This document shows, piece by piece, positions 1 to 60,186 of a stretch of DNA of 64,000 bases (position 1 is its first letter; each line of letters starts with the position of its first letter). Where the stretch lies: IMG/VR virus record IMGVR_UViG_3300020147_000065, positions 1 through 64,000 of that record; one strand, given 5' to 3'. The position numbers and the translations under genes were made by a program. A model generated the notes under the pieces. It saw nothing but the letters and a program-made list of their open reading frames with translations. It was not told where the DNA came from and did no database searches.

Positions 1-82
1 GTCTGGACGGACGACACTATTTTCTGCGATTGGTCGCGCGGTGACCCGTGGGACTAATTGCCCCCCCCCCCTCGGACAACAC

Positions 83-111
83 TTGACACGATAGGTAAAA
101 AACGATAAAAT
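83..111 (+). promoter_or_regulatory. sigma70-type promoter (near-leaderless) for ruvB-like gene
   Basis: TTGACA 83-88, 17 nt spacer, TAAAAT 106-111; ATG at 122. Confidence 0.8.
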
Positions 112-121
112 ATATATTGCT

Positions 122-1075
122 ATGATTTTCGACAAGATGATTGGACAAGAACAAGCCAAAGATTTACTCCAATTCTATCTTGAGGCGAAAGATAAACTTG
201 GTATTTTCCCTAATATGCTGATGTTGGCACCAAAGGGAACGGGAAAAACTTATTTAGCTGAGTTATTGGGCGAAGCCTTAGAAAAGCCCTTTATTAAAAT
301 CAATGCAGCTTCTATCAAATCTTTCGATTCACTTGTGCATAAAGTCTTTGAAAAGTTTGAAGGTGAGGAATACACCCTTTTCATTGATGAAATTCACAAA
401 TTAAAGAAAGGTTCTTCAACTATTGATGGGCTGCTGACTGTGCTTGACACGAAAAGTAGCCATGTAACAGAGTTGACGCATGAGGATAGAAAAATTATAT
501 TTGACTTCCGAAAGTTTACATTTCTTGCCTCAACGACAGAAAAACAGTTGGTGTTTGAGCCGTTCTTAGACAGATTGCAACATATAACTTTGGTCGCGTA
601 TTCTCCCGAAGAAATAGGGAAAATTATTCGCTTCCATACACCCGACTTGTTTCTTACTCAGGATGCGGTTGATTTTCTCTTGCCTTATTGTCGGGGTAAT
701 GCTCGGCAAGCATGGCACATCGCACAAAACCTGATTAAGTTTGCCGCAGTAAATGATTTAAAGACTGTGGACAAAGACGCAGCCGTTGCTTTTACGGACA
801 AACTGCATATGCTGGAATTTGGTGTTACATTAGAAGAGTTTAGAGTGTTAAGGCTTATTGCAGAAGAAACAAAAGGTGTTACACTAACAACCTTAACATC
901 TCGCACCGATTACACCAAAGGCTCACAGCAAGACATTGAAAAATTCTTGTTGCGTCTTGGTTTAATTACCAACGAAAACTCTTTGCGTAAGGTAACACAA
1001 AAGGGTAAAGACTACATCACAAGGAACTTAAAATATGCCACGCCCAAAAGGGGCAGTCAATCTGCCCAAAGTTGA
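122..1075 (+). CDS. ruvB: RuvB-like Holliday junction branch-migration AAA+ ATPase
   Basis: Walker A APKGTGKT, Walker B LFIDEIH, sensor FTFLASTT, PFLDRL (RuvB PLRDRF-like), CRGNARQA, C-terminal winged-helix-like region ending RKVTQKG. Confidence 0.85.
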   Translation: MIFDKMIGQEQAKDLLQFYLEAKDKLGIFPNMLMLAPKGTGKTYLAELLGEALEKPFIKINAASIKSFDSLVHKVFEKFEGEEYTLFIDEIHKLKKGSSTIDGLLTVLDTKSSHVTELTHEDRKIIFDFRKFTFLASTTEKQLVFEPFLDRLQHITLVAYSPEEIGKIIRFHTPDLFLTQDAVDFLLPYCRGNARQAWHIAQNLIKFAAVNDLKTVDKDAAVAFTDKLHMLEFGVTLEEFRVLRLIAEETKGVTLTTLTSRTDYTKGSQQDIEKFLLRLGLITNENSLRKVTQKGKDYITRNLKYATPKRGSQSAQS

Positions 1076-2806: not shown

Positions 2807-3051
2807 CCTTAATTATTGCTTTGTTTACAGTCGTGTTTGTCTTTCTATTTTTATATTTCCCTTTACTTTCATTCTATTCTCTTGTAATGTATGCTGGTTA
2901 TTACCACCTACAACTACATTTCTTCCCCCAGTGGCCGGAAATAGAATGGTTTACTTTCTTTTGGGTAATCATAATGATTTATATGACCGGCAGATTTATT
3001 GCAGCTATGTTTGGGAAGGAAAACGTGACGATCACTCGCTTTCTAAGGTAA
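2803..3051 (+). CDS. hydrophobic membrane protein
   Basis: two or three hydrophobic stretches; GTGA overlap. Confidence 0.6.
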   Translation: MTLIIALFTVVFVFLFLYFPLLSFYSLVMYAGYYHLQLHFFPQWPEIEWFTFFWVIIMIYMTGRFIAAMFGKENVTITRFLR

Positions 3052-3077
3052 AAGGACGCTCTTCGGGGCGTCCTTTT
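3051..3077 (+). terminator. intrinsic terminator
   Basis: AAAGGACGC / GCGTCCTTTT stem around a CTTCGG-containing loop. Confidence 0.8.
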
Positions 3078-3091
3078 CCTTGCCCCCCCCC

Positions 3092-3120
3092 TTGCTCACC
3101 TTCATTTTAATTGATATAAT
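3092..3120 (+). promoter_or_regulatory. sigma70-type leaderless promoter preceded by a C9 tract
   Basis: TTGCTC-17-TATAAT; ATG 6 nt after the -10. Confidence 0.7.
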
Positions 3121-3126
3121 CTAAGT

Positions 3127-3372
3127 ATGAAAATCAAATTCGAACAAACAACATTTGGTGAATTAAAAAGCGGAGATTGGTTTAGTTTATCCGCTCTAAT
3201 AAGAACTATCCCACAAGGTTTACCTACTATGGGTAATGTAAAACTTGCTAAAGAAGGTATTGCAGCAAAAGAGAGTGAGAGAATGGGGCCGTTTAATGTG
3301 GTTTCATTTGATGGCCGATTCAGGACTTTTCGAGACGATGAAAAGGTCTATAAATTGACTTTGGAGAAATAA
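3127..3372 (+). CDS. hypothetical protein
   Basis: ORF directly behind promoter. Confidence 0.65.
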   Translation: MKIKFEQTTFGELKSGDWFSLSALIRTIPQGLPTMGNVKLAKEGIAAKESERMGPFNVVSFDGRFRTFRDDEKVYKLTLEK

Positions 3373-3809
3373 TGTATCCACATAATACTCTAACTAAAAT
3401 TCCTAAACCCGAACCACCCGATTACGAAAAGAGCACAGGTCAGCTTGGTGGTAAACTCGAAGAATTTAATCCTATTCATCGCCGCTTTCCAGGCCCATAT
3501 AAACGTAAGGTAGAGTTTAGTGCTCTACGTTTTCCAGGTTATCCACACTACCACGTTAAACTCAAAGAGGAACACAATACTGTTTTTAGTGTAGATGATG
3601 CAGGGAATCGTTATTGGGTAAATCCGTGGAATGACCCCGAAGGCGAGGGTAAAATCTTTCAGTGGAAAAAGACGGCTTCTTTGCGTCGTGCTCACTTTTG
3701 GGCAAAGCTCAAATTCGCAAAAGAGTTCGACCCTGAGACTCACGAACTCGTTTTTGAAGATAGAGCTTTACAGGCTCGTGTAAACAGACTATTAAGACAA
3801 GGCGATTAA
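3372..3809 (+). CDS. hypothetical protein
   Basis: TAATG coupling, 145 aa. Confidence 0.65.
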   Translation: MYPHNTLTKIPKPEPPDYEKSTGQLGGKLEEFNPIHRRFPGPYKRKVEFSALRFPGYPHYHVKLKEEHNTVFSVDDAGNRYWVNPWNDPEGEGKIFQWKKTASLRRAHFWAKLKFAKEFDPETHELVFEDRALQARVNRLLRQGD

Positions 3810-3825
3810 TAGTCTGCCCCCCCCC

Positions 3826-3854
3826 TTGCGCACCAACCTCGACTACGATATAAT
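3826..3854 (+). promoter_or_regulatory. sigma70-type leaderless promoter preceded by a C9 tract
   Basis: TTGCGC-17-TATAAT; ATG at 3862. Confidence 0.7.
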
Positions 3855-3861
3855 TTATTCC

Positions 3862-4416
3862 ATGAGCGAACAAAAGACCACTAACTTTAAGGCCGGTGAG
3901 GACGTAATTGTTTACAGCGATTTCCTCAACCAAAGGCGACCACTGGGAAAAGCCATGCTCGACGAGCGTTTAGGCGATTACCCCACAAAGAACCAATGGG
4001 CACTCGCACAGTGGCGAGTGCGATTCTATGACGAACGCGGCAACTTGGAAACAGACGACGATAAAAAGCCTGTCTTTTCTACCATGCCGATTCTTGAAGT
4101 TGGCAAGCCAAACGAGAATCGCCCACAATCTGAGGACTATTCGCAATATGGAGCGAAGCCCGAAGCTGACGAAACTGGCGAAGTTGTTGAAAAGAAAAAG
4201 CCGGAGAAGAAAGCAGCCCCATCAACCGGCAGTCGTGGACGTGGACGCCCCGAAGTCCCAATGAATGAAATCAAGGCCCGTAACATTGTGCGACAACTCA
4301 AAGATAAAAAGCGCGATGGGCGACTTGATGAAGCTGTGGACTACCTTTTAAATGAGTGTCCAAAGGCCGCAAAATTCGTAGAAAAATACCTTGAATACCT
4401 TGACGGCAGCTTCTAA
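3862..4416 (+). CDS. hypothetical protein with AT-hook-like RGRGRP motif
   Basis: start moved to ATG 3862 behind the promoter; Lys/Glu-rich linker. Confidence 0.65.
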   Translation: MSEQKTTNFKAGEDVIVYSDFLNQRRPLGKAMLDERLGDYPTKNQWALAQWRVRFYDERGNLETDDDKKPVFSTMPILEVGKPNENRPQSEDYSQYGAKPEADETGEVVEKKKPEKKAAPSTGSRGRGRPEVPMNEIKARNIVRQLKDKKRDGRLDEAVDYLLNECPKAAKFVEKYLEYLDGSF

Positions 4417-6644: not shown

Positions 6645-6682
6645 GGGCTACCCTTGACAGGGTAGCCCGAAACTGGTATAAT
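6645..6682 (+). promoter_or_regulatory. sigma70 promoter with the -35 hexamer as loop of a 9-bp inverted repeat
   Basis: GGGCTACCC-TTGACA-GGGTAGCCC, TATAAT at 6677-6682 (17 nt spacer). Confidence 0.85.
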
Positions 6683-13810: not shown

Positions 13811-14795
13811 GACTTCTTCTCCTAATTCTAAACCAACATTTGGTATAATGTGCACCACATTCGGTGGTGCTCCATACGTACATCTTCAGTTGGCGATCCG
13901 CCGAAAATTTTTCGGAAAGGTCCCTATGGCGATTATAGATGATTGTTCCTATCAGAGTAAAATTTTGATGAAGCTCTGCGAACATTACGATGCCTATTTT
14001 CTTTCCGGTAACGAACGCCTCGGCCACCTGCAAGGCGACCTTCAGGCTCATCGTCTGGGCCTCGAATGGGCAAAATATCTCGGTTTGGAATACCTCGTAA
14101 AAATTTCCAGACGTTGTGTGCCCCTTTTTGACTGGACTGGTGCCTTTATAAAAACCGTTGAGGATACCGGACACCTTCCAACTTATGCGGGTACTGACAA
14201 TTATTTTATGTACCCACTACGCTCCGAATGCTGGGCCATGAATGTAGAGGAATGGTATCCAATTAAAGATGAAATTTTAGGTGTAGCAAAAGAAGCGGCT
14301 GAATATACTCTTCATCGTCATGCGGTCAGGCTCGGTAACATTGGCCCTGATTGGGGCCTCTGTGCTGAAAATCGTAGAGTGCGTAAAGAGGGAGTTCTGT
14401 GGCACGAAAATACTACTCTGGAAGAATACGCTGCCGCAGCAAATCAATTTGGTTTAAAATATACCGCAGAAGATTTCGATAATGTAAATGGTGGACTCGG
14501 ACTGGGAAATGAGAAATGGCGTCATTCGGTACCGGGAAGTGTGCTTCCGTGTCCAGGAAAAGAAACTCGCCCTGAACAAACTATTCGAAAATTAGAACAA
14601 AACAGAGTAGGACAGAATATTTCCGTACCAAAGGCTAAAAAATCTAAGCGAATTGAGACATGGCCACCAGTTAAAGAAAGGATTATCATTCCCAAATCAA
14701 CTCGTAGAGGGGAAGAAGCGCCTATTCCACAACCGCGTCCATCTACTGGTGCGACGGTCAAACCAATTAATACCGACTATATTCACGGTGACTAA
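13809..14795 (+). CDS. GT-A fold glycosyltransferase-like protein with low-complexity C-terminus
   Basis: N-terminal beta strand FGIMCTT, MAIIDDCS, GHLQGDL...GL, LVKISRR pattern. Confidence 0.55.
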   Translation: MTSSPNSKPTFGIMCTTFGGAPYVHLQLAIRRKFFGKVPMAIIDDCSYQSKILMKLCEHYDAYFLSGNERLGHLQGDLQAHRLGLEWAKYLGLEYLVKISRRCVPLFDWTGAFIKTVEDTGHLPTYAGTDNYFMYPLRSECWAMNVEEWYPIKDEILGVAKEAAEYTLHRHAVRLGNIGPDWGLCAENRRVRKEGVLWHENTTLEEYAAAANQFGLKYTAEDFDNVNGGLGLGNEKWRHSVPGSVLPCPGKETRPEQTIRKLEQNRVGQNISVPKAKKSKRIETWPPVKERIIIPKSTRRGEEAPIPQPRPSTGATVKPINTDYIHGD

Positions 14796-15616
14796 TGTTT
14801 TTTGTTACACAACCAATTTTTATTCCTGCGGCAGACAAAGCACAGAGGTATATTGATTCCATCACCTCATTAGGTGAATACATGCGAAAGTATTATCCAA
14901 CTGATCGCCGTATTAGCTTCGCCTTCGGAGGATGGTGTTTTGATGATGAATTTTGGGGAGTAGCAGCAGCCACCATTAAAGAGTACTTTCCTGATGCTCC
15001 CTGTGTTAGATATAAAGAAAATAAAGGTAAAGCAGTTATCATCAACGATCTTTCCAGACAGTTTCTTTATGATAATCCTTACCTTATCTCCGTGGATAGC
15101 GATATTTTATTTCCTTTCTACACACCATACATGTTTGATAGACTGGATATAATGTTTCAGATGTCTCAGAAGATAAGAAAAACACCACCTGGAGTGATAG
15201 GGCTTAAACAGGATGAGAATGGTGTTCACTATCAGTCTGTTTATAGTAATCAATATGAGTATGAGACGGCCATCCACGGGGTAAATTATCGTGAGAGGTT
15301 CGTGTGGCCCAATATCCGTGGAGGCATTGGTGGCGGATGCCTTTTAATCAACGCTGAGTTATGGAAGAAGATTGGTGGATACAGAGTAATGGGAGTTTAC
15401 TCGTCTGATGACGGTAAACTCCTGTTGGATGCTCGTAATAACGGTTATTCTATACAGGTTTCTGACTCCATTTCTATTATTCATCCCATAGAAGATGATC
15501 CGACTTATGGTGTATGGAAGCGTAGAGTGTGTCAGGCTACTACTCGAACTGGTGTGAAGGCTGATATTACACAACAAATTAAAGAAGCTGATGATTTTTG
15601 GGCACGTAGACGTTGA
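14795..15616 (+). CDS. GT2-like glycosyltransferase
   Basis: ENKGKAVIIN, LISVDSDI (DxD), GGGCLLINAELWKKIGGY, YSSDD. Confidence 0.75.
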   Translation: MFFVTQPIFIPAADKAQRYIDSITSLGEYMRKYYPTDRRISFAFGGWCFDDEFWGVAAATIKEYFPDAPCVRYKENKGKAVIINDLSRQFLYDNPYLISVDSDILFPFYTPYMFDRLDIMFQMSQKIRKTPPGVIGLKQDENGVHYQSVYSNQYEYETAIHGVNYRERFVWPNIRGGIGGGCLLINAELWKKIGGYRVMGVYSSDDGKLLLDARNNGYSIQVSDSISIIHPIEDDPTYGVWKRRVCQATTRTGVKADITQQIKEADDFWARRR

Positions 15617-15660
15617 CTTACGTGCTCATTTTTGTTATACTGTACGTGAGGTACACAAAC

Positions 15661-30497: not shown

Positions 30498-30499
30498 CG

Positions 30500-30528
30500 A
30501 AAAGGCCATGCTTTATGCATGGCCTTTT
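30500..30528. terminator. bidirectional terminator
   Basis: AAAAGGCCATGC / GCATGGCCTTTT between convergent blocks. Confidence 0.85.
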
Positions 30529-30530
30529 CC

Positions 30531-35514: not shown

Positions 35515-36033
35515 TCAAGAATAAACATATGCGCGTAATTTTCTTTCGACTTTTTCTCTGGCTCTCCATGAACGAGACTTAACTGTTCCAATAGGTACTT
35601 GTAACTTTGCTGCCGTTTCTTCAACATCCAGATTACCTAAGTAACGTGTAACAAGTATCCGTTGTGAAACAGGACTTAGGGTATCTATTACTTCACCGGC
35701 TAAAACTCTTAACTCCGCAGACTCTACAATCTCATGTGGTAAATCATCAGCAACATCAGTACACGCTGCTATGATTTTATCCATATTCTCACGGTAACGT
35801 AGTTTACGTCTGATAAGATCGCAGCAATAATTCCTTGCTACCGCTTTTACCCATTCACGCATCTTAGTTGTTTCTGTTACTGTATGACGGTTCAACCAAC
35901 AACGTAACAACACATCTTGTTCTGCGTCTTCTATGAAAGCAGGTTCATGTTTTAATATATAGCCGAGCATTAAGCGAACCACGGGTCTATAATCTGCGTA
36001 GTACGCTTCCATTTCTGTTAGCGTTTTTTGCAT
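35515..36033 (-). CDS. ECF-type (sigma24-like) RNA polymerase sigma factor
   Basis: region 2 DAEQDVLLRCW...WVKAVARNYCCDLIRR; region 4 LSPVSQRIL...EETAAKLQVPIGTVKSR. Confidence 0.9.
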   Translation of the reverse strand: MQKTLTEMEAYYADYRPVVRLMLGYILKHEPAFIEDAEQDVLLRCWLNRHTVTETTKMREWVKAVARNYCCDLIRRKLRYRENMDKIIAACTDVADDLPHEIVESAELRVLAGEVIDTLSPVSQRILVTRYLGNLDVEETAAKLQVPIGTVKSRSWRAREKVERKLRAYVYS

Positions 36034-42441: not shown

Positions 42442-42956
42442 GGTTTACTCACTTTCTTTTCTTTGTCTTTTTCGTCCAGTTCTGCTTTGGCTGCTCTACG
42501 TCTGGTTTCTTCCTCTGCTTCAAGCTGATACTCACGATATTTTGACATCGTGTATCTTTCATCTTCAAGGAAAGATACATAGCTTAGTAAATCATATACA
42601 GAACGGTTCTGGTCCATGTAAAGAAATGCTTCATTATAGAAATGGTCATATCCTGCTCGTGGAAAATAAGCGAATAAGGTTTTTCTTTCGCCGTGAGGGC
42701 AAACTTCAAACTTTCGTCCTTCGTAAGTGAAAGCTACCGATCTATCCTCGGATTTATATCGAGTTACCTCTTCCAATTCTCTCGCATTGAACTTTGCGTT
42801 TTCGAGAAATGTCTCAAAGGAAATCTCATAAAAAATTTTATTAAAAGACTGCCAACAGGTATGCTTAACAGCTAATTCATTATCTTTATAAGCCTTTTCT
42901 TTGTTGGCAAAGGCCCACTGGTCAATAGGTCTTTCGTTAATTGATTCATCAGTCAT
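42426..42956 (-). CDS. hypothetical protein
   Basis: 176 aa coupled ORF. Confidence 0.6.
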   Translation of the reverse strand: MTDESINERPIDQWAFANKEKAYKDNELAVKHTCWQSFNKIFYEISFETFLENAKFNARELEEVTRYKSEDRSVAFTYEGRKFEVCPHGERKTLFAYFPRAGYDHFYNEAFLYMDQNRSVYDLLSYVSFLEDERYTMSKYREYQLEAEEETRRRAAKAELDEKDKEKKVSKPWWRI

Positions 42957-43542
42957 AACGAACTATACCCCCTTCTCCACCTAAACGAGCAATATAAAAC
43001 GGTGCGCTGGTGGTCATACAGTGCTTATTAGCCGCCTTGAGTGCGTTAAGCATTGTAGCTACTGGTGGGCAACCAATTTGATAAGTTGCGGCGAGGGCGC
43101 CCATCATAAAATCCTGACCGGAAGCATCCGCCCAGTATTCGGTAATCTCATCTACGTCAAACTCTTTATCAATCACAAAGAGTTTGTCACGATAACCTAA
43201 CATGAAGATAGTGTTGCTGCCACCCACGCGGTTACGCATCTCAGCCAAAGCACCATGATCTTCAAGTAAATCTCTAAAAACAGGCAACCATTCAGCCACG
43301 ATAAATTCTTCTACACCCATATTATCTGGATGCTTTACCTGACCGATTACATGCTTCCAGATTGCTGCTGCTCTCCCGTGGCCAGCATAAGCCACGAGCA
43401 TTTCATCTTTTTGTTCGGGACCATTTTTATGGATGAACAACTTACCTGCTACGGTTGAAATCATTGCTTCATCAGTAATAGCAGAGTCAGCACCCATTAC
43501 TATTCCGGTTGTGGTCACCATTCCTGCAATTAAACTCATCAT
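42949..43542 (-). CDS. Ntn-hydrolase, proteasome beta/HslV-like protein
   Basis: N-terminal SLIAGM...IVMGADS.IT, GK, ASGQDFMMGAL, TTSAPF. Confidence 0.7.
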   Translation of the reverse strand: MMSLIAGMVTTTGIVMGADSAITDEAMISTVAGKLFIHKNGPEQKDEMLVAYAGHGRAAAIWKHVIGQVKHPDNMGVEEFIVAEWLPVFRDLLEDHGALAEMRNRVGGSNTIFMLGYRDKLFVIDKEFDVDEITEYWADASGQDFMMGALAATYQIGCPPVATMLNALKAANKHCMTTSAPFYIARLGGEGGIVRYD

Positions 43543-43560
43543 TTTCTCCCATCAAGACAG

Positions 43561-43599
43561 ATTATACAGCAAAAAGGGGAGGCTGTCAAGCCTCCCCTT
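43561..43599 (-). promoter_or_regulatory. terminator hairpin whose loop is the TTGACA of a sigma70 promoter
   Basis: minus strand AAGGGGAGGC-TTGACA-GCCTCCCCTT-TTT...TATAAT with 17 nt spacer. Confidence 0.85.
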
Positions 43600-43601
43600 C
43601 C

Positions 43602-44207
43602 TCAGTGTACGTCACTTGTTGGACGTTTCCCAAATGTTCTAACCACATGGTCAAGACTCGCTTCGTATTCTTTAACCTCTTCTTCCTTCTTGCGTGTAAC
43701 AATTCCACAAACAATCATTGCGGCAAACGCAGAAGTCATAAGGTCAAGCGCGAGGCTCGGACCAATTGAAGGAAAATGAGAATCAAGATGACTTAAAATG
43801 ACTCCTGTTTGATTCTTTAGAATCCCAGCACATTGAGCGGTTGTGTAACTTTTCCATAGGTAAGCTCTTTGTGGAATAACATTGTGAGAAAATTGTCTCA
43901 ATGTTTCTTCATCTTGCTCCAACCTAAGTGCCCTGTAAGCGATTGCAGCCACTTTCCTAAAGGCACATAGCGCACGATGATCGCCAGCAAACTTAACCCA
44001 AAGAAGGCAACTCTCTTCCGCGTAGACATTTGCCATAACCATATAGTCCGCAAGCGTCTTAGAAGAACCGTCAGTTCGGTCGCCGCCAAGTGCATTCTGA
44101 TATTCGATTTCATCCGTGACGGCATCTAAAATCTCCTCAATTAGAGCACCGTATTCATTCTGGCTCATCGGTGGACTCTCCCTTCTTCTGCGCAATTTCA
44201 CGCGCAA
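43602..44207 (-). CDS. hypothetical helical protein
   Basis: 201 aa; start probably MSQNEY. Confidence 0.6.
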   Translation of the reverse strand: MRVKLRRRRESPPMSQNEYGALIEEILDAVTDEIEYQNALGGDRTDGSSKTLADYMVMANVYAEESCLLWVKFAGDHRALCAFRKVAAIAYRALRLEQDEETLRQFSHNVIPQRAYLWKSYTTAQCAGILKNQTGVILSHLDSHFPSIGPSLALDLMTSAFAAMIVCGIVTRKKEEEVKEYEASLDHVVRTFGKRPTSDVH

Positions 44208-45048
44208 TACATTGTTGATTCCAGGCAGAGGTAGGATAACTTTTCATAAAGTCACCATCTGCCTCACTGGTTTTCTTCATGAAAGCAAAGTAAGCAGCAT
44301 GGACGCGCTGAGGAGGTGTTAACACCGCGGTTTGCTCAATGAGTCCAGAACTCAGTGCAGCATCCATGATTTCTTCTTCGGTAAGAGTAAGATTACTTTC
44401 ATTTGGATTACCTTCAAGAGCATCAATAATATCAGAAAGATACTTTACTCTATCTTGACCATTGAAAGATGCCATATCATAAGCACGTTTAGCAAGTTCA
44501 TTTGAGGCTTCCGCTGTCCACAGGATTTCGGGATCATATCCCTTCAACCATCTTTGTATAAACTTGGAAGTATCAGCAATAATAGATTCGTAGGCTTCAG
44601 CCTCAGCTTTACCAATACGATTACTCATTTTGAATCCTTTGTCAGACAACTTGATTGTTTGCCAGCGTACTCGGCCCTCCTGAATACACCGTTTAATTTT
44701 TCTCTCGGTGGGCGTCAGTTGAGCGTTGCCGGTTTTCACGTCAACAAAAACAATCTCATTAATATCAGCATCATTTTCCCTGGCCGCGCTCATTCCATCA
44801 ATAACTACGTAATCGAATGGGCTACCAAAATGTTTACAATCTGAACCTAACCACGGCCAACCCTGCATAACAGGACCCATTTCTTCCCATAGTTGACCTT
44901 TAACTACATAGCGTTGCTTGTTCAAGGCATCAGCTATTTTCTTTTTCAGTTCCTTATCCCACTTTTTATCTATGAGCCATTTAACGAGGAGGCCAGTCAA
45001 AGTAGCGGTAACAAGGATACTTGCGCCTAAGATTATGTAAGATACCAT
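44155..45048 (-). CDS. Holliday junction resolvase-like endonuclease (PF10107-like) with N-terminal TM helix
   Basis: KGQLWEEMGP, FGSPFDYVVIDG, EIVFVDVKTGNAQLTPTERKIK. Confidence 0.8.
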   Translation of the reverse strand: MVSYIILGASILVTATLTGLLVKWLIDKKWDKELKKKIADALNKQRYVVKGQLWEEMGPVMQGWPWLGSDCKHFGSPFDYVVIDGMSAARENDADINEIVFVDVKTGNAQLTPTERKIKRCIQEGRVRWQTIKLSDKGFKMSNRIGKAEAEAYESIIADTSKFIQRWLKGYDPEILWTAEASNELAKRAYDMASFNGQDRVKYLSDIIDALEGNPNESNLTLTEEEIMDAALSSGLIEQTAVLTPPQRVHAAYFAFMKKTSEADGDFMKSYPTSAWNQQCIAREIAQKKGESTDEPE

Positions 45049-45254
45049 TTTCTATTTCCCTTTTAGGGTTGTAACCCATCCTCTGGCCCAGCCTTGAGAT
45101 GGCTGGGCCAATTACTACAAAGTATAACACAAGTAGCAGGACGATTACAAGTACCATTTTAGAAGTGACTCTTACAGATTATGCAACCATAACTAAAACC
45201 CAATGCAACAGGACAATTAGAAGGACAGCAGCAACGGCTGCGGCCCCAGCTAAT

Positions 45255-45830: not shown

Positions 45831-46035
45831 TATCTCTCCTCATTTCACCCACCGCTAAAGAAACTGCAAACCAAAAGACAACTAAGATAGTTGCACAGCT
45901 AATTACCGAACCAATCTGATTCACAACATCTTTAGTTTGTCCGTAATACACATAAAATGCGTAAGCAGAATAGATGATAGACAAACTAATCATCAAAATC
46001 GACAAAGTCGCTAATATTTTACGTAACATTATCAT
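45823..46035 (-). CDS. small two-TM protein
   Basis: hydrophobic pattern. Confidence 0.55.
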   Translation of the reverse strand: MIMLRKILATLSILMISLSIIYSAYAFYVYYGQTKDVVNQIGSVISCATILVVFWFAVSLAVGEMRRDNE

Positions 46036-46511
46036 CCTTTCTGTAACTCAAACAAGTCAACTATCTCTTGCACCTTTTCTAAAGTTAAACCTTGTTGGGG
46101 ATCAGTCCTGACAAGATTGGTAACTTTACCACCTAATTGTTCATCCGACATATCATCAACTACAACGAATTGATTGATATGTTTATGTTCAATGTAGGTT
46201 TTGATTTGTTTATCTCGTCCAGCAAGTGCTTCATCAGAACACGTATGACCGATTAGCTTACCACGGGCATTGGCTCCCGCAATCAAAAGAATATATTCAA
46301 ATCCTTTAAGGCTGACATCGCAGCCGAGAATCATATATCTCCATGCAGAGCTAAGGACAATTCGCATTTCAGGGATTTTCTCGAAAAGCACATTGAGATT
46401 TTCTATGCAGTCTTGTCTTAATCCACAGTAACCATTCGGCCACCTTTCGTGACCATTTAGAACGCCGTCGCAGTCGAGAAACAGGATAGGTATGTTCGTC
46501 AGTCTTTGCAT
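46032..46511 (-). CDS. HAD domain protein (Swiss Army Knife RNA-repair type)
   Basis: ILFLDCDGVLN, IVLSSAWR, FVVVDD, GLT. Confidence 0.85.
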   Translation of the reverse strand: MQRLTNIPILFLDCDGVLNGHERWPNGYCGLRQDCIENLNVLFEKIPEMRIVLSSAWRYMILGCDVSLKGFEYILLIAGANARGKLIGHTCSDEALAGRDKQIKTYIEHKHINQFVVVDDMSDEQLGGKVTNLVRTDPQQGLTLEKVQEIVDLFELQKG

Positions 46512-46660
46512 TTTTTCGTACCTTATAAGGGAAATGACATTCTTCCCATTCTTTAATTGTTGGTGGTGGACACGGCATCAGGATACCACCTTAATTAACC
46601 ATGTGGCTAATAAAAAACCAAGAATCAAACCACCAAGGAAAGCGCAGAAAACTATTCCTG

Positions 46661-47284
46661 TCAAGTTGGCCACCAACCCATGAAAATAATACCAATTTCC
46701 GCGTCTGACTCCAGTAAATTCTTGCGGACTCGATTGATTATCGGACAACCATAATTTTCAAGTTTAGGATCGAAGTGTGGGGTGTAAATATCGAGTCCGG
46801 TTATGATAACCCCAGGTTGAAGCATATCAAAGGCTTCAAGTAGATTATCACCAAAAACTTTAGTGTGTAACCGAGCACCATCAATATTCCAGGTGTCACG
46901 CATGATCTGATAGTCAACAATTTTACCATATTCATCGTGGATTTCTCGTAAATCCTGCTGATGCTCTGGATTCATTTCTGAGAAGAAATATTTTGTACCA
47001 TTAATATCTATTACTAATGGAAACTGTTGATTAGCTAAACCTTTTACGGGATTATGGCGAGGAGATAGTTTATCAGGAATTATTTGTGGAGGTTGAGTGA
47101 CCTCTGATACTTCTTCAATGTCATCTTCCAATTCCCATTCATCATCAGATAAATCTAATTCCTCTACCTCTTCAACAGAGGGAAGAGGCTTCAAAGCCTC
47201 TTCCGCATCGCTTATTTTAGCCGCCACTAAAGTAGCAGGAATAATCCCAAAAAGTCGTAAGAATCCACGTCTATTGATATTCAT
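46661..47284 (-). CDS. protein with twin-arginine-like N-terminus
   Basis: MNINRRGFLRLFGIIPATLVAA. Confidence 0.6.
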   Translation of the reverse strand: MNINRRGFLRLFGIIPATLVAAKISDAEEALKPLPSVEEVEELDLSDDEWELEDDIEEVSEVTQPPQIIPDKLSPRHNPVKGLANQQFPLVIDINGTKYFFSEMNPEHQQDLREIHDEYGKIVDYQIMRDTWNIDGARLHTKVFGDNLLEAFDMLQPGVIITGLDIYTPHFDPKLENYGCPIINRVRKNLLESDAEIGIIFMGWWPT

Positions 47285-47742
47285 TATGGTCCCTGTAAAA
47301 TTGGCGTTGGGTCATTCAATGCACTTACCGAATAAGTAAACATGTCATTATGGCCCTTCGCGTGTTCGATTGCCATTGGGATCAACCATTTGAGGTTGGG
47401 AACGGTTGGTTCTTTCTCTAAATTGGAAACTTCGATGAATGTAATCTTTTCATCGGTTAACGTCTCAAATTTATTCCAATCCTCTCTGACAACATAAAAG
47501 AAATATAATTCGGTTCCATGAGGAAAGTCTAATTTCATCAAGGGTTTCCATTCATCCCAGGGAATATTTAAACCACATTCCTCACGAACCTCTCTGGCTA
47601 CGGCATCAACAGCAAACTCGAAAGGTTCAATCTTGCCACCAATCCCATTTAATAAACCGGCTTGCCACGCCGGGCGATTCTTCTCCACCAGAGTTACTGC
47701 CTGTAATTCTGGTGAGAAGATAAATCCTACAACATACCGCAT
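47284..47742 (-). CDS. NUDIX hydrolase
   Basis: GGKIEPFEFAVDAVAREVREECGL Nudix box. Confidence 0.92.
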   Translation of the reverse strand: MRYVVGFIFSPELQAVTLVEKNRPAWQAGLLNGIGGKIEPFEFAVDAVAREVREECGLNIPWDEWKPLMKLDFPHGTELYFFYVVREDWNKFETLTDEKITFIEVSNLEKEPTVPNLKWLIPMAIEHAKGHNDMFTYSVSALNDPTPILQGP

Positions 47743-48497
47743 AAATCCTCCTTCATTGCTACCTGATAACGAGCCTTATTGATGAACGGAGTATAAGCAC
47801 TCAATAAAATGTTGTTAGCCAATTCATCATCAAACTTACGATCCATAAATTGAGATTCTTTAAATGCTTCATCAAACTTCTCGTAAGCATTTTCCATCAT
47901 TGTTTTTACTTCTTCTGGTTTAAAAGTAAGAGGGTTACACTTTAAATTCCAACAGATGTTCATGTGTCTCTTTGGTTTAACTGTGAATACCCCCGTGGTT
48001 AGCAGGTTAATAGCAGATTCCGAAAGTCGCATGACGTGATAAGCTGGTTTGTTAGCATATCCATATTTTGAAATCATTTCTGCTCTTGCTTTACCTTCTT
48101 CGGCTTTTCCACTCGCGTTAAAAACAGCCTGGATTTGATTTCTTAGATAACCATCAAACCCACCAGCAACCTTTCTAACATCTGTCAACCTTTCCCGATT
48201 GCGACGAACGACATCGAATAACGGTGTTGTTACCTCAAAAGCATCGTCCGGTGCCCATAGTGCTTCGAGAGCAGGTGTTGCTCCACCTTTTATTTTGGTA
48301 AGAAACTCACGAAGTTCAGAGTAATCTACATCCACCTCGCTGTTTTGCTTAACAAGATGTTTGTTTTGAGTATGTTCTATACCAAGTATTTTTGAAATTT
48401 CAGTATTGAGAAAAACACCACGTTCATCAATATCTGACTCAGGAGTAGCAAGACCATATAAATAGCTACCCCCTCGAAATTTAGCCAAGATAATCAT
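47727..48497 (-). CDS. nucleotidyltransferase (YcgL/RlaP-like)
   Basis: GGSYLYGLATPESDIDERGVF, ALEAL, AYHVMRL. Confidence 0.85.
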   Translation of the reverse strand: MIILAKFRGGSYLYGLATPESDIDERGVFLNTEISKILGIEHTQNKHLVKQNSEVDVDYSELREFLTKIKGGATPALEALWAPDDAFEVTTPLFDVVRRNRERLTDVRKVAGGFDGYLRNQIQAVFNASGKAEEGKARAEMISKYGYANKPAYHVMRLSESAINLLTTGVFTVKPKRHMNICWNLKCNPLTFKPEEVKTMMENAYEKFDEAFKESQFMDRKFDDELANNILLSAYTPFINKARYQVAMKEDLCGML

Positions 48498-49913: not shown

Positions 49914-49942
49914 ATTATACACGAACCCAAGAGGTATGTCAA
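49914..49942 (-). promoter_or_regulatory. consensus sigma70 promoter, near-leaderless
   Basis: TTGACA-17-TATAAT on minus strand, 10 nt before ATG 49903. Confidence 0.85.
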
Positions 49943-50524: not shown

Positions 50525-50556
50525 AAAAGCCCCGCAGGGTTGCTCTGCGGGGCTTT
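50523..50556 (+). terminator. intrinsic terminator
   Basis: AAAAGCCCGCAG / CTGCGGGGCTTTT stem with one extra G. Confidence 0.75.
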
Positions 50557-50849
50557 TGGTTCGAAGGACACCGGGCCTGGGGATTATGGCCTTTTACTTT
50601 GGTGTGAACCTTGAGGACGGATTTTGTTATATGAGGCTAACTCGGCAACCAACAAAGAGTAAACATCGTTGCTGTCTTCACCGCCTCAAATTCCAGAATC
50701 AAAAAAGTCACACTGGTTCCAATCTAAACCTGAGAGTCTTGAGTCAAAAATCTTCGTCACTTGCCACAAATCTCCAAACTTTGCACAATTAGTCACATGT
50801 GTTGTTAATGAGTGTTAAACTTATGGAGAAACTAAGAAAGGGAAGAAGA

Positions 50850-56988: not shown

Positions 56989-57063
56989 AACGTCCTGTTT
57001 GTGGAAAATACCCAAACAGGACGTTCTTTTTAGCTTGACAAAAAGCCCGGAAACCGCTATAAT
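56989..57063 (+). promoter_or_regulatory. terminator followed by leaderless sigma70 promoter
   Basis: AACGTCCTGTTT / AAACAGGACGTT + CTTTTT; TTGACA 57035-17-TATAAT 57058; ATG 57071. Confidence 0.85.
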
Positions 57064-57070
57064 TTAATAC

Positions 57071-57349
57071 ATGATCGAGATTAGATTCAGAGACTACCCC
57101 GAAGATAACTTCGATTCTTTTTATGATTTCCCCACAAAAACGGAAGCCATCAGTTGGTGGAATACGTTCTTAGCTGAGAAAAAAGAATCTGGAGCAGAAG
57201 TTACTGTCTTCAAGGAGTGGCCCGAAGATGAAGATACCCTAAAGTCTTTGGGTTTAAATTCTCCCACCTTTGGTGGCGAGTTTATGAAAGGGTATTGTAT
57301 AACCGGAGGAGAAAAGGCATTATGGGTGCTAATACTGTCATTACAGTAG
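57071..57349 (+). CDS. hypothetical protein
   Basis: leaderless ORF. Confidence 0.65.
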   Translation: MIEIRFRDYPEDNFDSFYDFPTKTEAISWWNTFLAEKKESGAEVTVFKEWPEDEDTLKSLGLNSPTFGGEFMKGYCITGGEKALWVLILSLQ

Positions 57350-59419: not shown

Positions 59420-59479
59420 AAAGGGCCAGGAGATTTTCTTCTCCTGGCCCTTGACTTTTAGTGTGTATGTTGGTATAAT
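59420..59479 (+). promoter_or_regulatory. terminator hairpin abutting a sigma70 promoter
   Basis: AAGGGCCAGGAG / CTCCTGGCCCTT stem overlapping TTGACT 59451; TATAAT 59474. Confidence 0.8.
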
Positions 59480-60159: not shown

Positions 60160-60186
60160 AAAAGGGGGCTTCGGCCCCCTTTTTTG
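60160..60186 (+). terminator. intrinsic terminator
   Basis: AAGGGGGC-TTCG-GCCCCCTT + T tract. Confidence 0.88.

What the first reader, a model, noticed from the sequence alone, without database searches (positions are those of the whole stretch)
43561..43599. Second, sequence-unrelated hairpin with TTGACA as loop, upstream of the proteasome-like gene
Seen on the minus strand: AAGGGGAGGC-TTGACA-GCCTCCCCTT-TTT-GCTG-TATAAT, 17-nt spacer. The architecture matches 6645 but the stem sequence differs, so the design recurs independently. Here the stem is followed by a U-tract, making a terminator and promoter fused in 39 bp. At 59420-59479 and 56989-57063 terminators abut the -35 in a looser version.
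Basis: seen in the sequence. Interest (0 to 1): 0.6.

Follow-up and report, generated by a model that had tools for sequence, protein, structure and literature searches.

The report
Terminator hairpin fused to a promoter
In this uncultivated 221-kb phage, a transcription stop signal and a perfect start signal share 39 bp, with the promoter's -35 box forming the hairpin loop; this is a real, recurring space-saving layout, but one already known in principle from other phages.

Summary
On the minus strand at 43599-43561 a 10-bp G+C-rich stem (13-14 bp with A-U and G-U pairs) has TTGACA as its loop. A T5 run follows, then TATAAT after a 17-nt spacer. The stem begins 2 nt after the stop codon of the upstream ORF. 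A GGGAG ribosome site and the ATG of an HslV-like gene follow. The window is the first 64 kb of a 221,108-bp IMG/VR virus record that has its own sigma-70-family gene; neither RNA-polymerase family searched gave a match.

Five promoter-like sites in the genome have the -35 box as a hairpin loop: 6654, 15613, 43589, 67802 and 205724. Their stems are unrelated, and three carry a T run. Shuffled flanks predict about 0.08 such sites. Hairpin centres lie either 17 nt or more upstream of the -35 centre or within 2 nt of it, never in between.

The same fusion appears in 10 of 124 sampled sites in unrelated viral contigs, against 0.09 expected. Phage RB49, where PeSL cassettes were described, places its hairpins in the spacer or around the -10 instead.

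Best reading: a compact intrinsic terminator and sigma-70-type promoter composite, PeSL-like in function but not a homologous repeat. Neither activity could be tested because no RNA data were available. Interest is modest.

The parts
43602..44207 (-). Upstream ORF of about 200 codons with no family match. Its TGA stop is at 43604-43602, 2 nt before the stem.
43574..43599 (-). Hairpin: 5' arm 43599-43590, loop 43589-43584, 3' arm 43583-43574. Pairing can extend to 43602/43571 through A-U and G-U pairs.
   Evidence: -22.6 kcal/mol for the hairpin; z = -4.1 in a 71-nt context.
43584..43589 (-). -35 hexamer TTGACA, which is the hairpin loop.
43571..43575 (-). T5 run, a U-tract in RNA. Two of the T are the last stem bases and three follow the stem. 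It lies inside the promoter spacer.
   Evidence: The same layout of a 10-nt arm plus T5-6 plus 1-2 nt fills the 17-nt spacer at 15613 and 67802.
43561..43566 (-). -10 hexamer TATAAT, 17 nt after the -35.
43552..43555 (-). Predicted transcription start, 6-9 nt after the -10. This is inferred, not mapped.
   Evidence: Inference from standard sigma-70 promoter geometry applied to the sequence.
43546..43550 (-). Shine-Dalgarno sequence GGGAG.
42949..43542 (-). HslV-family (proteasome-like) peptidase gene, first gene of the downstream unit. Translation probably starts at the second ATG, 43539.
   Evidence: phrog_1040, E 1.7e-8. (31% identity to Geobacillus virus E3 'peptidase HslV family'). (the stored protein is 196 aa). 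No Pfam or PDB sequence match.
6645..6682 (+). Sibling cassette between rIIA and rIIB: 9-bp stem, TTGACA loop, 17-nt spacer, TATAAT, no T run.
15599..15641 (+). Sibling cassette: hairpin with TTGACT in the loop, a T5 run, then TATACT. The TGA inside TTGACT (15614-15616) is the stop codon of ORF 14795-15616.
59421..59479 (+). Looser version: a 13-bp hairpin whose last two T are the first two bases of TTGACT, then 17 nt, then TATAAT.
56989..57063 (+). Looser version: hairpin 56989-57025 plus CTTTTT, 3 nt, then TTGACA, 17 nt, TATAAT.

Best explanation
The element is a compact composite of an intrinsic (Rho-independent) terminator and a sigma-70-type promoter.

Host RNA polymerase travels leftward through the upstream genes. 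The nearest strong upstream promoter on that strand is at 49942. The polymerase transcribes the hairpin and its U-run directly after the stop codon of ORF 43602-44207, and releases the RNA inside the promoter spacer, at roughly 43566-43572.

A new polymerase carrying the primary sigma factor binds the same DNA as a duplex. It uses TTGACA (the loop) and TATAAT, starts near 43553, and produces a short leader of 10-12 nt with GGGAG for the HslV-like gene and the genes behind it. RNA made from this promoter begins downstream of the hairpin, so it never contains the terminator.

The -35 box sits in the loop because the loop is the only part of a hairpin that is free of pairing constraints. The sequence-neutral upstream flank and the 17-nt spacer can carry the two arms and the U-run. 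This arrangement saves about 20-35 nt per gene junction.

Shown: the sequence anatomy, its thermodynamic stability, its recurrence with unrelated stems, its statistical excess, its position between a stop codon and a start codon, and the same design in unrelated viral contigs. Inferred: that termination and initiation actually occur here.
For: - Anatomy.
- Promoters of this type are real signals in this genome. There are 21 perfect sites. Of the sites matching at least 11 of 12, 46 of 63 are followed by an ATG-ORF within 4-45 nt, against 17% at random positions.
- The phage has a sigma-70-family gene, and searches for two RNA-polymerase families gave no match, so it probably uses the host polymerase.
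- Five -35-loop hairpins exist with unrelated stems, 27-55% identical in register. Three share the same spacer layout of a 10-nt arm, T5-6 and 1-2 nt.
- Flank-shuffle control: 4 observed against 0.08 expected.
- Hairpin-centre offsets are bimodal with an empty zone from -16 to -5.
- Canonical hairpin plus T-run terminators occur elsewhere in the genome, for example at 60160-60183, 50525-50557 and 30499-30529.
- PeSL cassettes of T4-like phages were shown experimentally to act as both promoter and terminator (PMC2839356, read).
Against:
- The U-run is short, five U followed by GCUGU, and the generic scan did not call it a terminator.
- Two of the five siblings (6654 and 205724) have no T run, so hairpins of this type need not terminate.
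- The host is unknown, so recognition of TTGACA-17-TATAAT by its primary sigma factor is assumed.
- No close relative exists in any collection searched, so conservation or covariation at this locus cannot be tested.
Confidence: 0.72

Rival explanations
1. The hairpin is an RNA 3'-end stabiliser or processing site for the upstream message (an RNase III or exonuclease barrier), not an efficient terminator. Polymerase mostly reads through, and the promoter simply adds transcripts.
For: Siblings at 6654 and 205724 lack a T run. About 48 further hairpins in this genome are followed by a C run instead of a T run. Many loops are UUCG-type, which is typical of stable RNA structures.
Against: This hairpin, and those at 15613 and 67802, have a T5-6 run placed exactly after a G+C-rich stem, as in canonical terminators. 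The IMG/VR look-alikes were selected for a T run and still show the hairpin 100-fold above expectation.
Confidence: 0.12
2. The cassette is a PeSL-type mobile regulatory module. Its main significance would be as a recombination site that shuffles the flanking genes.
For: PeSLs combine a strong sigma-70-like promoter with a stem-loop between a stop codon and the next start codon (PMC2839356). This genome also carries about 80-90 repeated hairpin / C-run / promoter cassettes in a region of small ORFs.
Against: The five -35-loop cassettes share only the two hexamers; identity outside them is 27-55% in register. That is too little for homologous exchange. The flanking genes are enzyme genes in a long co-oriented cluster, not small ORFans. 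No relatives are available to show insertions or deletions at this junction.
Confidence: 0.06
3. The inverted repeat acts at the DNA level, either as a cruciform that hides or exposes the -35 box, or as an operator for a dimeric regulator, or as an N4-type hairpin promoter.
For: The repeat is centred exactly on the -35 box. Hairpin promoters exist in phage N4 (my own knowledge).
Against: The stems differ completely between sites, so no single protein could read them. The arms are only 9-10 bp, and the hexamers are a perfect duplex-type consensus. No T7/N4-like polymerase domain was found, although that search had no positive control. The T run is strand-specific, which points to an RNA-level function.
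Confidence: 0.05
4. The arrangement is a chance juxtaposition of an ordinary terminator and an ordinary promoter in a short intergenic gap, with no selection for the register.
For: If hairpin centres were spread evenly over about 50 nt, a few would fall near the -35 by chance. The counts are small: 5 of 27 pairs.
Against: All five centres lie within 2 nt of the -35 centre, and none lies in the 12-nt zones on either side. Binomial P is about 0.0014 for the plain promoters. The same exact register recurs in unrelated viral contigs.
Confidence: 0.05

Closest known systems
PeSL (promoter-early stem-loop) cassettes of T4-like phages (Arbiol et al. 2010, PMC2839356; Comeau et al. 2014, PMC4122927)
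   Same: Both combine a strong sigma-70-like promoter and a stable stem-loop into one short intergenic cassette between the stop codon of one gene and the ribosome site of the next. In PeSLs the stem-loop acts as terminator or attenuator for upstream transcription. The paper lists stem-loops overlapping the -35 as one of five subclasses.
   Different: PeSLs are a conserved repeated sequence of about 100 bp in hyperplastic regions, and they mediate recombination. Here the stems are unrelated and the flanking genes are enzyme genes. In 100 kb of RB49 scanned with the same script, hairpins lie inside the spacer (11) or have the -10 box as loop (10), and none has the -35 as loop. In this genome 5 have the -35 as loop and none the -10. 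The phage is not T4-like and has no close relative.
Canonical intrinsic (Rho-independent) terminators
   Same: A G+C-rich stem of 8-10 bp, a short loop, a U-run directly after the stem, an A-rich stretch before it, and a position just after a stop codon.
   Different: The loop is a functional promoter element, and the U-run lies in a promoter spacer. The U-run has only five U, and the generic scan did not list the hairpin.
Moron-type units of lambdoid phages (gene with its own promoter and terminator)
   Same: Each gene unit carries its own start and stop signals (discussed in PMC2839356).
   Different: In morons the promoter and terminator flank the gene and are separate. Here the stop signal of one unit and the start signal of the next share the same 39 bp.
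Same-register fusions in uncultivated viral contigs (IMG/VR loci L115, L093/L008, L113, L099, L090, L018/L122, L069, L058)
   Same: A hairpin whose loop is TTGACA, with a 3' arm and T run filling a 17-nt spacer before TATAAT, often followed by AGGAGG and a start codon.
   Different: The stem sequences and contigs are unrelated, and none is a relative of this phage.

Membership tests
sigma-70-type promoter | -35 TTGACA and -10 TATAAT separated by 16-18 nt | tested here: met
   12 of 12 matches with a 17-nt spacer.
sigma-70-type promoter | Located upstream of a co-oriented gene start at a plausible distance | tested here: met
   The ATG lies 18 nt after the -10, preceded by GGGAG. Genome-wide, 73% of such sites precede an ORF start against 17% at random positions.
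sigma-70-type promoter | A primary transcript 5' end 6-9 nt after the -10 | not testable with these tools
The record is a metagenomic virus.
intrinsic terminator | Stable G+C-rich hairpin with a short loop | tested here: met
   10-14 bp stem, -22.6 kcal/mol, z = -4.1 in context.
intrinsic terminator | U-run directly after the stem on the transcribed strand | tested here: inconclusive
   T5 followed by GCTGT. The rule used is not met when the stem is extended through G-U pairs, but it is met with the 10-bp Watson-Crick stem.
intrinsic terminator | Lies downstream of a co-oriented gene end | tested here: met
   The stem starts 2 nt after TGA 43604-43602.
intrinsic terminator | RNA 3' ends map to the U-run | not testable with these tools
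   No RNA data.
PeSL cassette | Promoter and stem-loop combined in one intergenic cassette | tested here: met
PeSL cassette | Sequence conserved between copies over tens of bases, allowing homologous exchange | tested here: not met
   Outside the hexamers the five cassettes are 27-55% identical in register.
PeSL cassette | Flanks small ORFans in hyperplastic regions; insertions or deletions between relatives are bounded by cassettes | tested here: inconclusive
   The flanking genes are enzyme-like and sit in a long cluster. No relatives were found for comparison.
N4-type DNA hairpin promoter | A phage-encoded single-subunit RNA polymerase that reads an extruded hairpin | tested here: inconclusive
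   PF00940 gave no match in the genome, but the control genomes gave none either.

The most novel reading that the evidence does not exclude
The fusion may be more than space-saving. It could be a polymerase hand-over device. Single-molecule work shows that bacterial RNA polymerase often stays on the DNA after intrinsic termination and can re-initiate at a nearby promoter (PMC6978380, PMC6978322, PMC10372574). A terminator whose release point lies inside the next promoter would give the shortest possible search distance. Successive phage gene units would then be coupled in rate while still producing separate, insulated RNAs.
Probability: 0.1. Interest if true: 0.6.

Novelty: new member of a known kind. 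Interest (0 to 1): 0.3.

Why it matters
The case shows how two signals with different constraints can share the same bases. The consensus hexamer goes in the loop, and the arms go in sequence-neutral flanks. This solution has arisen repeatedly, within one phage genome and in unrelated viral contigs.

For annotation, a hairpin directly after a stop codon can hide a promoter, so such junctions should be treated as operon boundaries. For synthetic biology, it provides a natural insulator-plus-promoter unit of about 60 nt.

It does not open a new field. Composite promoter-terminator cassettes are already described in T4-like phages.

Tried and rejected
- Close relatives for a conservation or covariation test: none found. 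Megablast and tblastn against the phage collection found nothing nearer than 31% protein identity. IMG/VR scans with three proteins found nothing. A search of the 5.8-billion-protein collection found only the phage's own protein. DNA-pattern scans for the C-run cassette found none in IMG/VR and two single chance matches in metagenomes.
- Identifying the phage through its genome length in the literature led nowhere.
- A crude greedy ORF call was used to classify hairpins as coding or intergenic. It was unreliable because the longest-start rule runs into intergenic DNA and small ORFs are missed, so I did not use it.
- Rfam: no family match; the two hits are far below the gathering scores.
- Operator or cruciform reading: rejected because the stems are unrelated and the T run is strand-specific.
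- The ORFs on either side of the 15613 cassette are not paralogues.

Full report
**What is in the sequence**

Reading the minus strand from 43604, the elements come in this order:
- TGA, the stop codon of ORF 43602-44207;
- two G;
- a 10-nt purine-rich arm, 43599-43590;
- TTGACA, 43589-43584;
- the complementary arm, 43583-43574, ending in TT;
- TTT, then GCTG;
- TATAAT, 43566-43561;
- 10 nt, then GGGAG;
- ATG ATG at 43542 and 43539.

The promoter scan scores this site 12 of 12 with a 17-nt spacer. It is the only perfect site in 40-48 kb. The hairpin alone has -22.6 kcal/mol. A 71-nt RNA context folds at -28.5 kcal/mol, z = -4.1, and no shuffle of 200 folds as well.

The generic terminator scan did not list the hairpin. 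Its maximal stem, extended through A-U and G-U pairs, absorbs three of the five T.

**Surroundings**

The site lies in a long leftward gene cluster, from about 49.9 to 39.6 kb, whose first strong promoter is at 49942.
- Upstream genes include an RlaP-type nucleotidyltransferase, a NUDIX hydrolase, a HAD_SAK_2 protein and a Holliday-junction-resolvase-like endonuclease.
- The gene directly upstream (43602-44207) has no family match.
- The first downstream gene matches the PHROG 'peptidase HslV family' (E 1.7e-8). It is 31% identical to a Geobacillus virus E3 gene with the same name. It has no Pfam or PDB sequence match, so 'proteasome-like' is plausible but only lightly supported.
- Further downstream lie a DUF5662 protein, an exonuclease and a DHH phosphoesterase.
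- No Rfam family covers the site.

**The genome**

The window is the first 64 kb of a single 221,108-bp contig with 43.8% G+C. It is held as an IMG/VR virus record with 89% estimated completeness. Its first 187 nt repeat at its end.

It encodes rIIA and rIIB, collagen-like tail fibres and a DnaB helicase, 36 tRNAs and a small sigma-70-family protein at 35515-36033. The multisubunit RNA-polymerase domain searched (PF00562) gave no match, nor did the T7-like family PF00940, though that search had no positive control. Transcription therefore most likely depends on the host polymerase.

I found no close relative in any collection. The host is unknown. The strong GGAG-type ribosome sites and the weak best hits lean towards Firmicutes.

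**Recurrence within the genome**

A scan for TTGACA-(16-18)-TATAAT found 21 perfect sites, 63 sites matching at least 11 of 12, and 116 matching at least 10 of 12. My arithmetic gives about 0.08 perfect sites expected for a genome of this size.

These are real start signals by position. Of the 63 sites, 46 are followed within 4-45 nt by an ATG-ORF, against 17% at random positions.

Five sites have the -35 box as the loop of a stable hairpin:

| Site | Location | Strength (kcal/mol) | T run |
|---|---|---|---|
| +6654 | rIIA / rIIB junction | -18.8 | none |
| +15613 | after ORF 14795-15616 | -14.4 | T5 |
| -43589 | this finding | -22.6 | T5 |
| +67802 | outside the window | -22.4 | T6 |
| +205724 | after a tRNA-Arg gene | -15.1 | none |

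In the three with a T run, the 17-nt spacer is filled the same way: a 10-nt arm, T5-6, then 1-2 nt. At 15613 and 67802 the TGA inside TTGACN is itself the stop codon of the upstream ORF, so coding sequence forms the 5' arm. In four of the five, the start codon lies 18-19 nt after the -10. Outside the hexamers the cassettes are 27-55% identical in register, which means essentially unrelated.

**Is it more than chance?**

Three controls address this.
1. I shuffled the flanks of all 116 sites while keeping the hexamers. The mean was 0.08 sites with a -35-loop hairpin of -14 kcal/mol or better, with a maximum of 2 in 300 trials. Four were observed under that strict definition.
2. TTGACN hexamers that are not part of a promoter-like site show such hairpins in 3 of 444 cases, about what loop composition alone would give.
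3. I tested the random juxtaposition of real hairpins and real promoters. There are 27 hairpin/promoter pairs within 60 nt. Their hairpin centres lie at -60 to -17 (22 pairs) or at -2 to 0 (5 pairs), with none from -16 to -5 and none downstream. Among promoters without a C run, 5 of about 12 hairpin-associated sites are loop-centred. The binomial P is about 0.0014 for a 5-nt window in a 64-nt range. That window was chosen after seeing the data, so this figure is only indicative.

**Comparison outside the genome**

The closest described system is the PeSL cassette of T4-like phages. It combines a strong sigma-70-like promoter with a stem-loop and was shown by reporter assays to act as both promoter and terminator. 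Five subclasses are defined by stem-loop position, including overlap with the -35 (PMC2839356; PMC4122927).

I ran my script on 100 kb of RB49. There, hairpins at promoter-like sites lie inside the spacer (11) or have the -10 box as their loop (10). None has the -35 as loop. This genome shows the reverse: 5 with the -35 as loop and none with the -10. The principle is the same, a consensus hexamer in the loop and arms in free sequence, but the register differs.

I then scanned IMG/VR for TTGACA-N10-T5-N2-TATAAT. Ten of those sites have a hairpin with the -35 as loop, against 0.09 expected after shuffling the upstream flank. They come from about eight distinct, unrelated contigs. The design is therefore convergent and fairly widespread.

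**Mechanism**

I take the element to be an intrinsic terminator for the upstream unit fused to the promoter of the next unit.
- Polymerase arriving from upstream makes the hairpin and U-run and releases the RNA inside the spacer.
- The promoter is read as duplex DNA by holoenzyme and starts near 43553.
- Its RNA begins downstream of the hairpin and never contains the terminator.
- The -35 occupies the loop because the loop carries no pairing constraint.

The sequence features, their stability, recurrence and statistics are shown. Termination and initiation themselves are inferred.

The two siblings without a T run may be attenuators or RNA 3'-end stabilisers. That is the main rival reading for this site too, but it is less likely here given the T5 run. 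DNA-level readings (operator, cruciform, N4-type hairpin promoter) fit poorly, because the stems are unrelated and the T run is strand-specific. A PeSL-like recombination role is unlikely for these five, because they share only 12 bases.

**Novelty**

This is a new member of a known kind, the composite promoter/terminator cassettes of phages. It is found in an orphan jumbo phage and uses the -35-loop register.

The most novel reading not excluded is polymerase hand-over. Polymerase can stay on DNA after intrinsic termination and re-initiate nearby (PMC6978380, PMC6978322, PMC10372574; found, abstracts only). A release point inside the next promoter would minimise the search distance. I give this about 10%.

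**What could not be done**

No sequencing runs could be retrieved, so there is no TSS or 3'-end evidence. No relatives were found, so there is no covariation test at this locus. No referred steps arose.

**Seen in passing**

The genome carries about 80-90 cassettes consisting of a variable hairpin, TG, C7-11, TTGC.., 17 nt, TAtAAT, 6-7 nt and ATG. They lie mostly at 155-195 kb. It also carries a 12-nt motif around CCCGTGG at ten times the expected frequency, on both strands and in all codon phases. Both look more unusual than the finding itself.

Noticed in passing
window 16-130, 3038-3140, 3772-3870; G000:C1 about 155,000-195,000 and 206,000-221,000: The genome has 99 runs of C7-11, against about 8 expected from composition. 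Of these, 77 are followed at once by TTG, 81 have a TAnnnT box at promoter spacing, 68 have ATG or GTG only 4-9 nt after the -10 (leaderless-looking starts), and 48 are preceded within 6 nt by a stable hairpin, often with a UUCG loop and without a T run. This is a second, highly repeated hairpin/promoter cassette class in front of small ORFs. No look-alike was found in IMG/VR.
   Followed up: partly
whole genome; in the window e.g. 7899, 10116, 10552, 40292, 42246, 43375 (+) and 41518, 42418, 49386 (-): The motif cCCCGTGG-W-T-R-G-C occurs 138 times, against about 13.5 expected. It is found on both strands, in sense, antisense and intergenic positions, with no codon-phase preference. Twenty-three copies sit in promoter spacers just before the -10. 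It is a DNA-level signal of unknown function, possibly a regulator, modification or nicking site.
   Followed up: partly
window 15613-15618; G000:C1:67802-67807: The TGA inside the -35 hexamer TTGACN is the stop codon of the upstream ORF. The C-terminal codons therefore form the 5' arm of the terminator hairpin, and the intergenic gap shrinks to about 44 nt.
   Followed up: yes
window 35515-36033 (-): A phage-encoded sigma-70-family protein of 172 aa with regions 2 and 4, similar in size to ECF sigma factors. Neither RNA-polymerase family searched (PF00940, PF00562) gave a match in the genome. Its promoter class was not identified.
   Followed up: partly
G000:C1:195,374-216,555 (outside the window): 36 tRNA genes, many with their own perfect promoter. 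Two have anticodons CTA (208926-208998) and TCA (216482-216555), which makes them amber- and opal-suppressor-like. ORFs in the window read normally under table 11, so no recoding is claimed.
   Followed up: no
window 1-187 and G000:C1:220,923-221,108: The first 187 nt of the contig repeat at its end (99.5% identity, with one extra C in the C run). The assembly is therefore probably complete, either circular or terminally redundant, although it is classed as 'linear'.
   Followed up: yes
window 43537-43542 (-): The HslV-like gene has two adjacent ATG codons. The stored protein starts at the second one and is 196 aa, giving Met-Ser-Leu at its N-terminus. After Met removal, Ser would be the N-terminal residue, as in serine-type HslV homologues such as CodW (my own knowledge). 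This was not tested.
   Followed up: no
window 57058-57073 and many sites: Several plain TTGACA-17-TATAAT promoters also have an ATG 6-7 nt after the -10, for example at 57071. This suggests leaderless messages outside the C-run class too.
   Followed up: no
window 46032-48497 (-): A cluster of RNA-repair-type genes: an RlaP nucleotidyltransferase, a NUDIX hydrolase and a HAD domain of 'Swiss Army Knife' RNA repair proteins. It lies upstream of a Holliday-junction-resolvase-like endonuclease at 44155-45048.
   Followed up: partly
window 45083-45111: A strong hairpin of -21.9 kcal/mol with an 11-bp stem lies in the 45049-45254 gap of the same leftward cluster. It has no T run and no promoter, so it is another non-canonical intergenic hairpin.
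   Followed up: no
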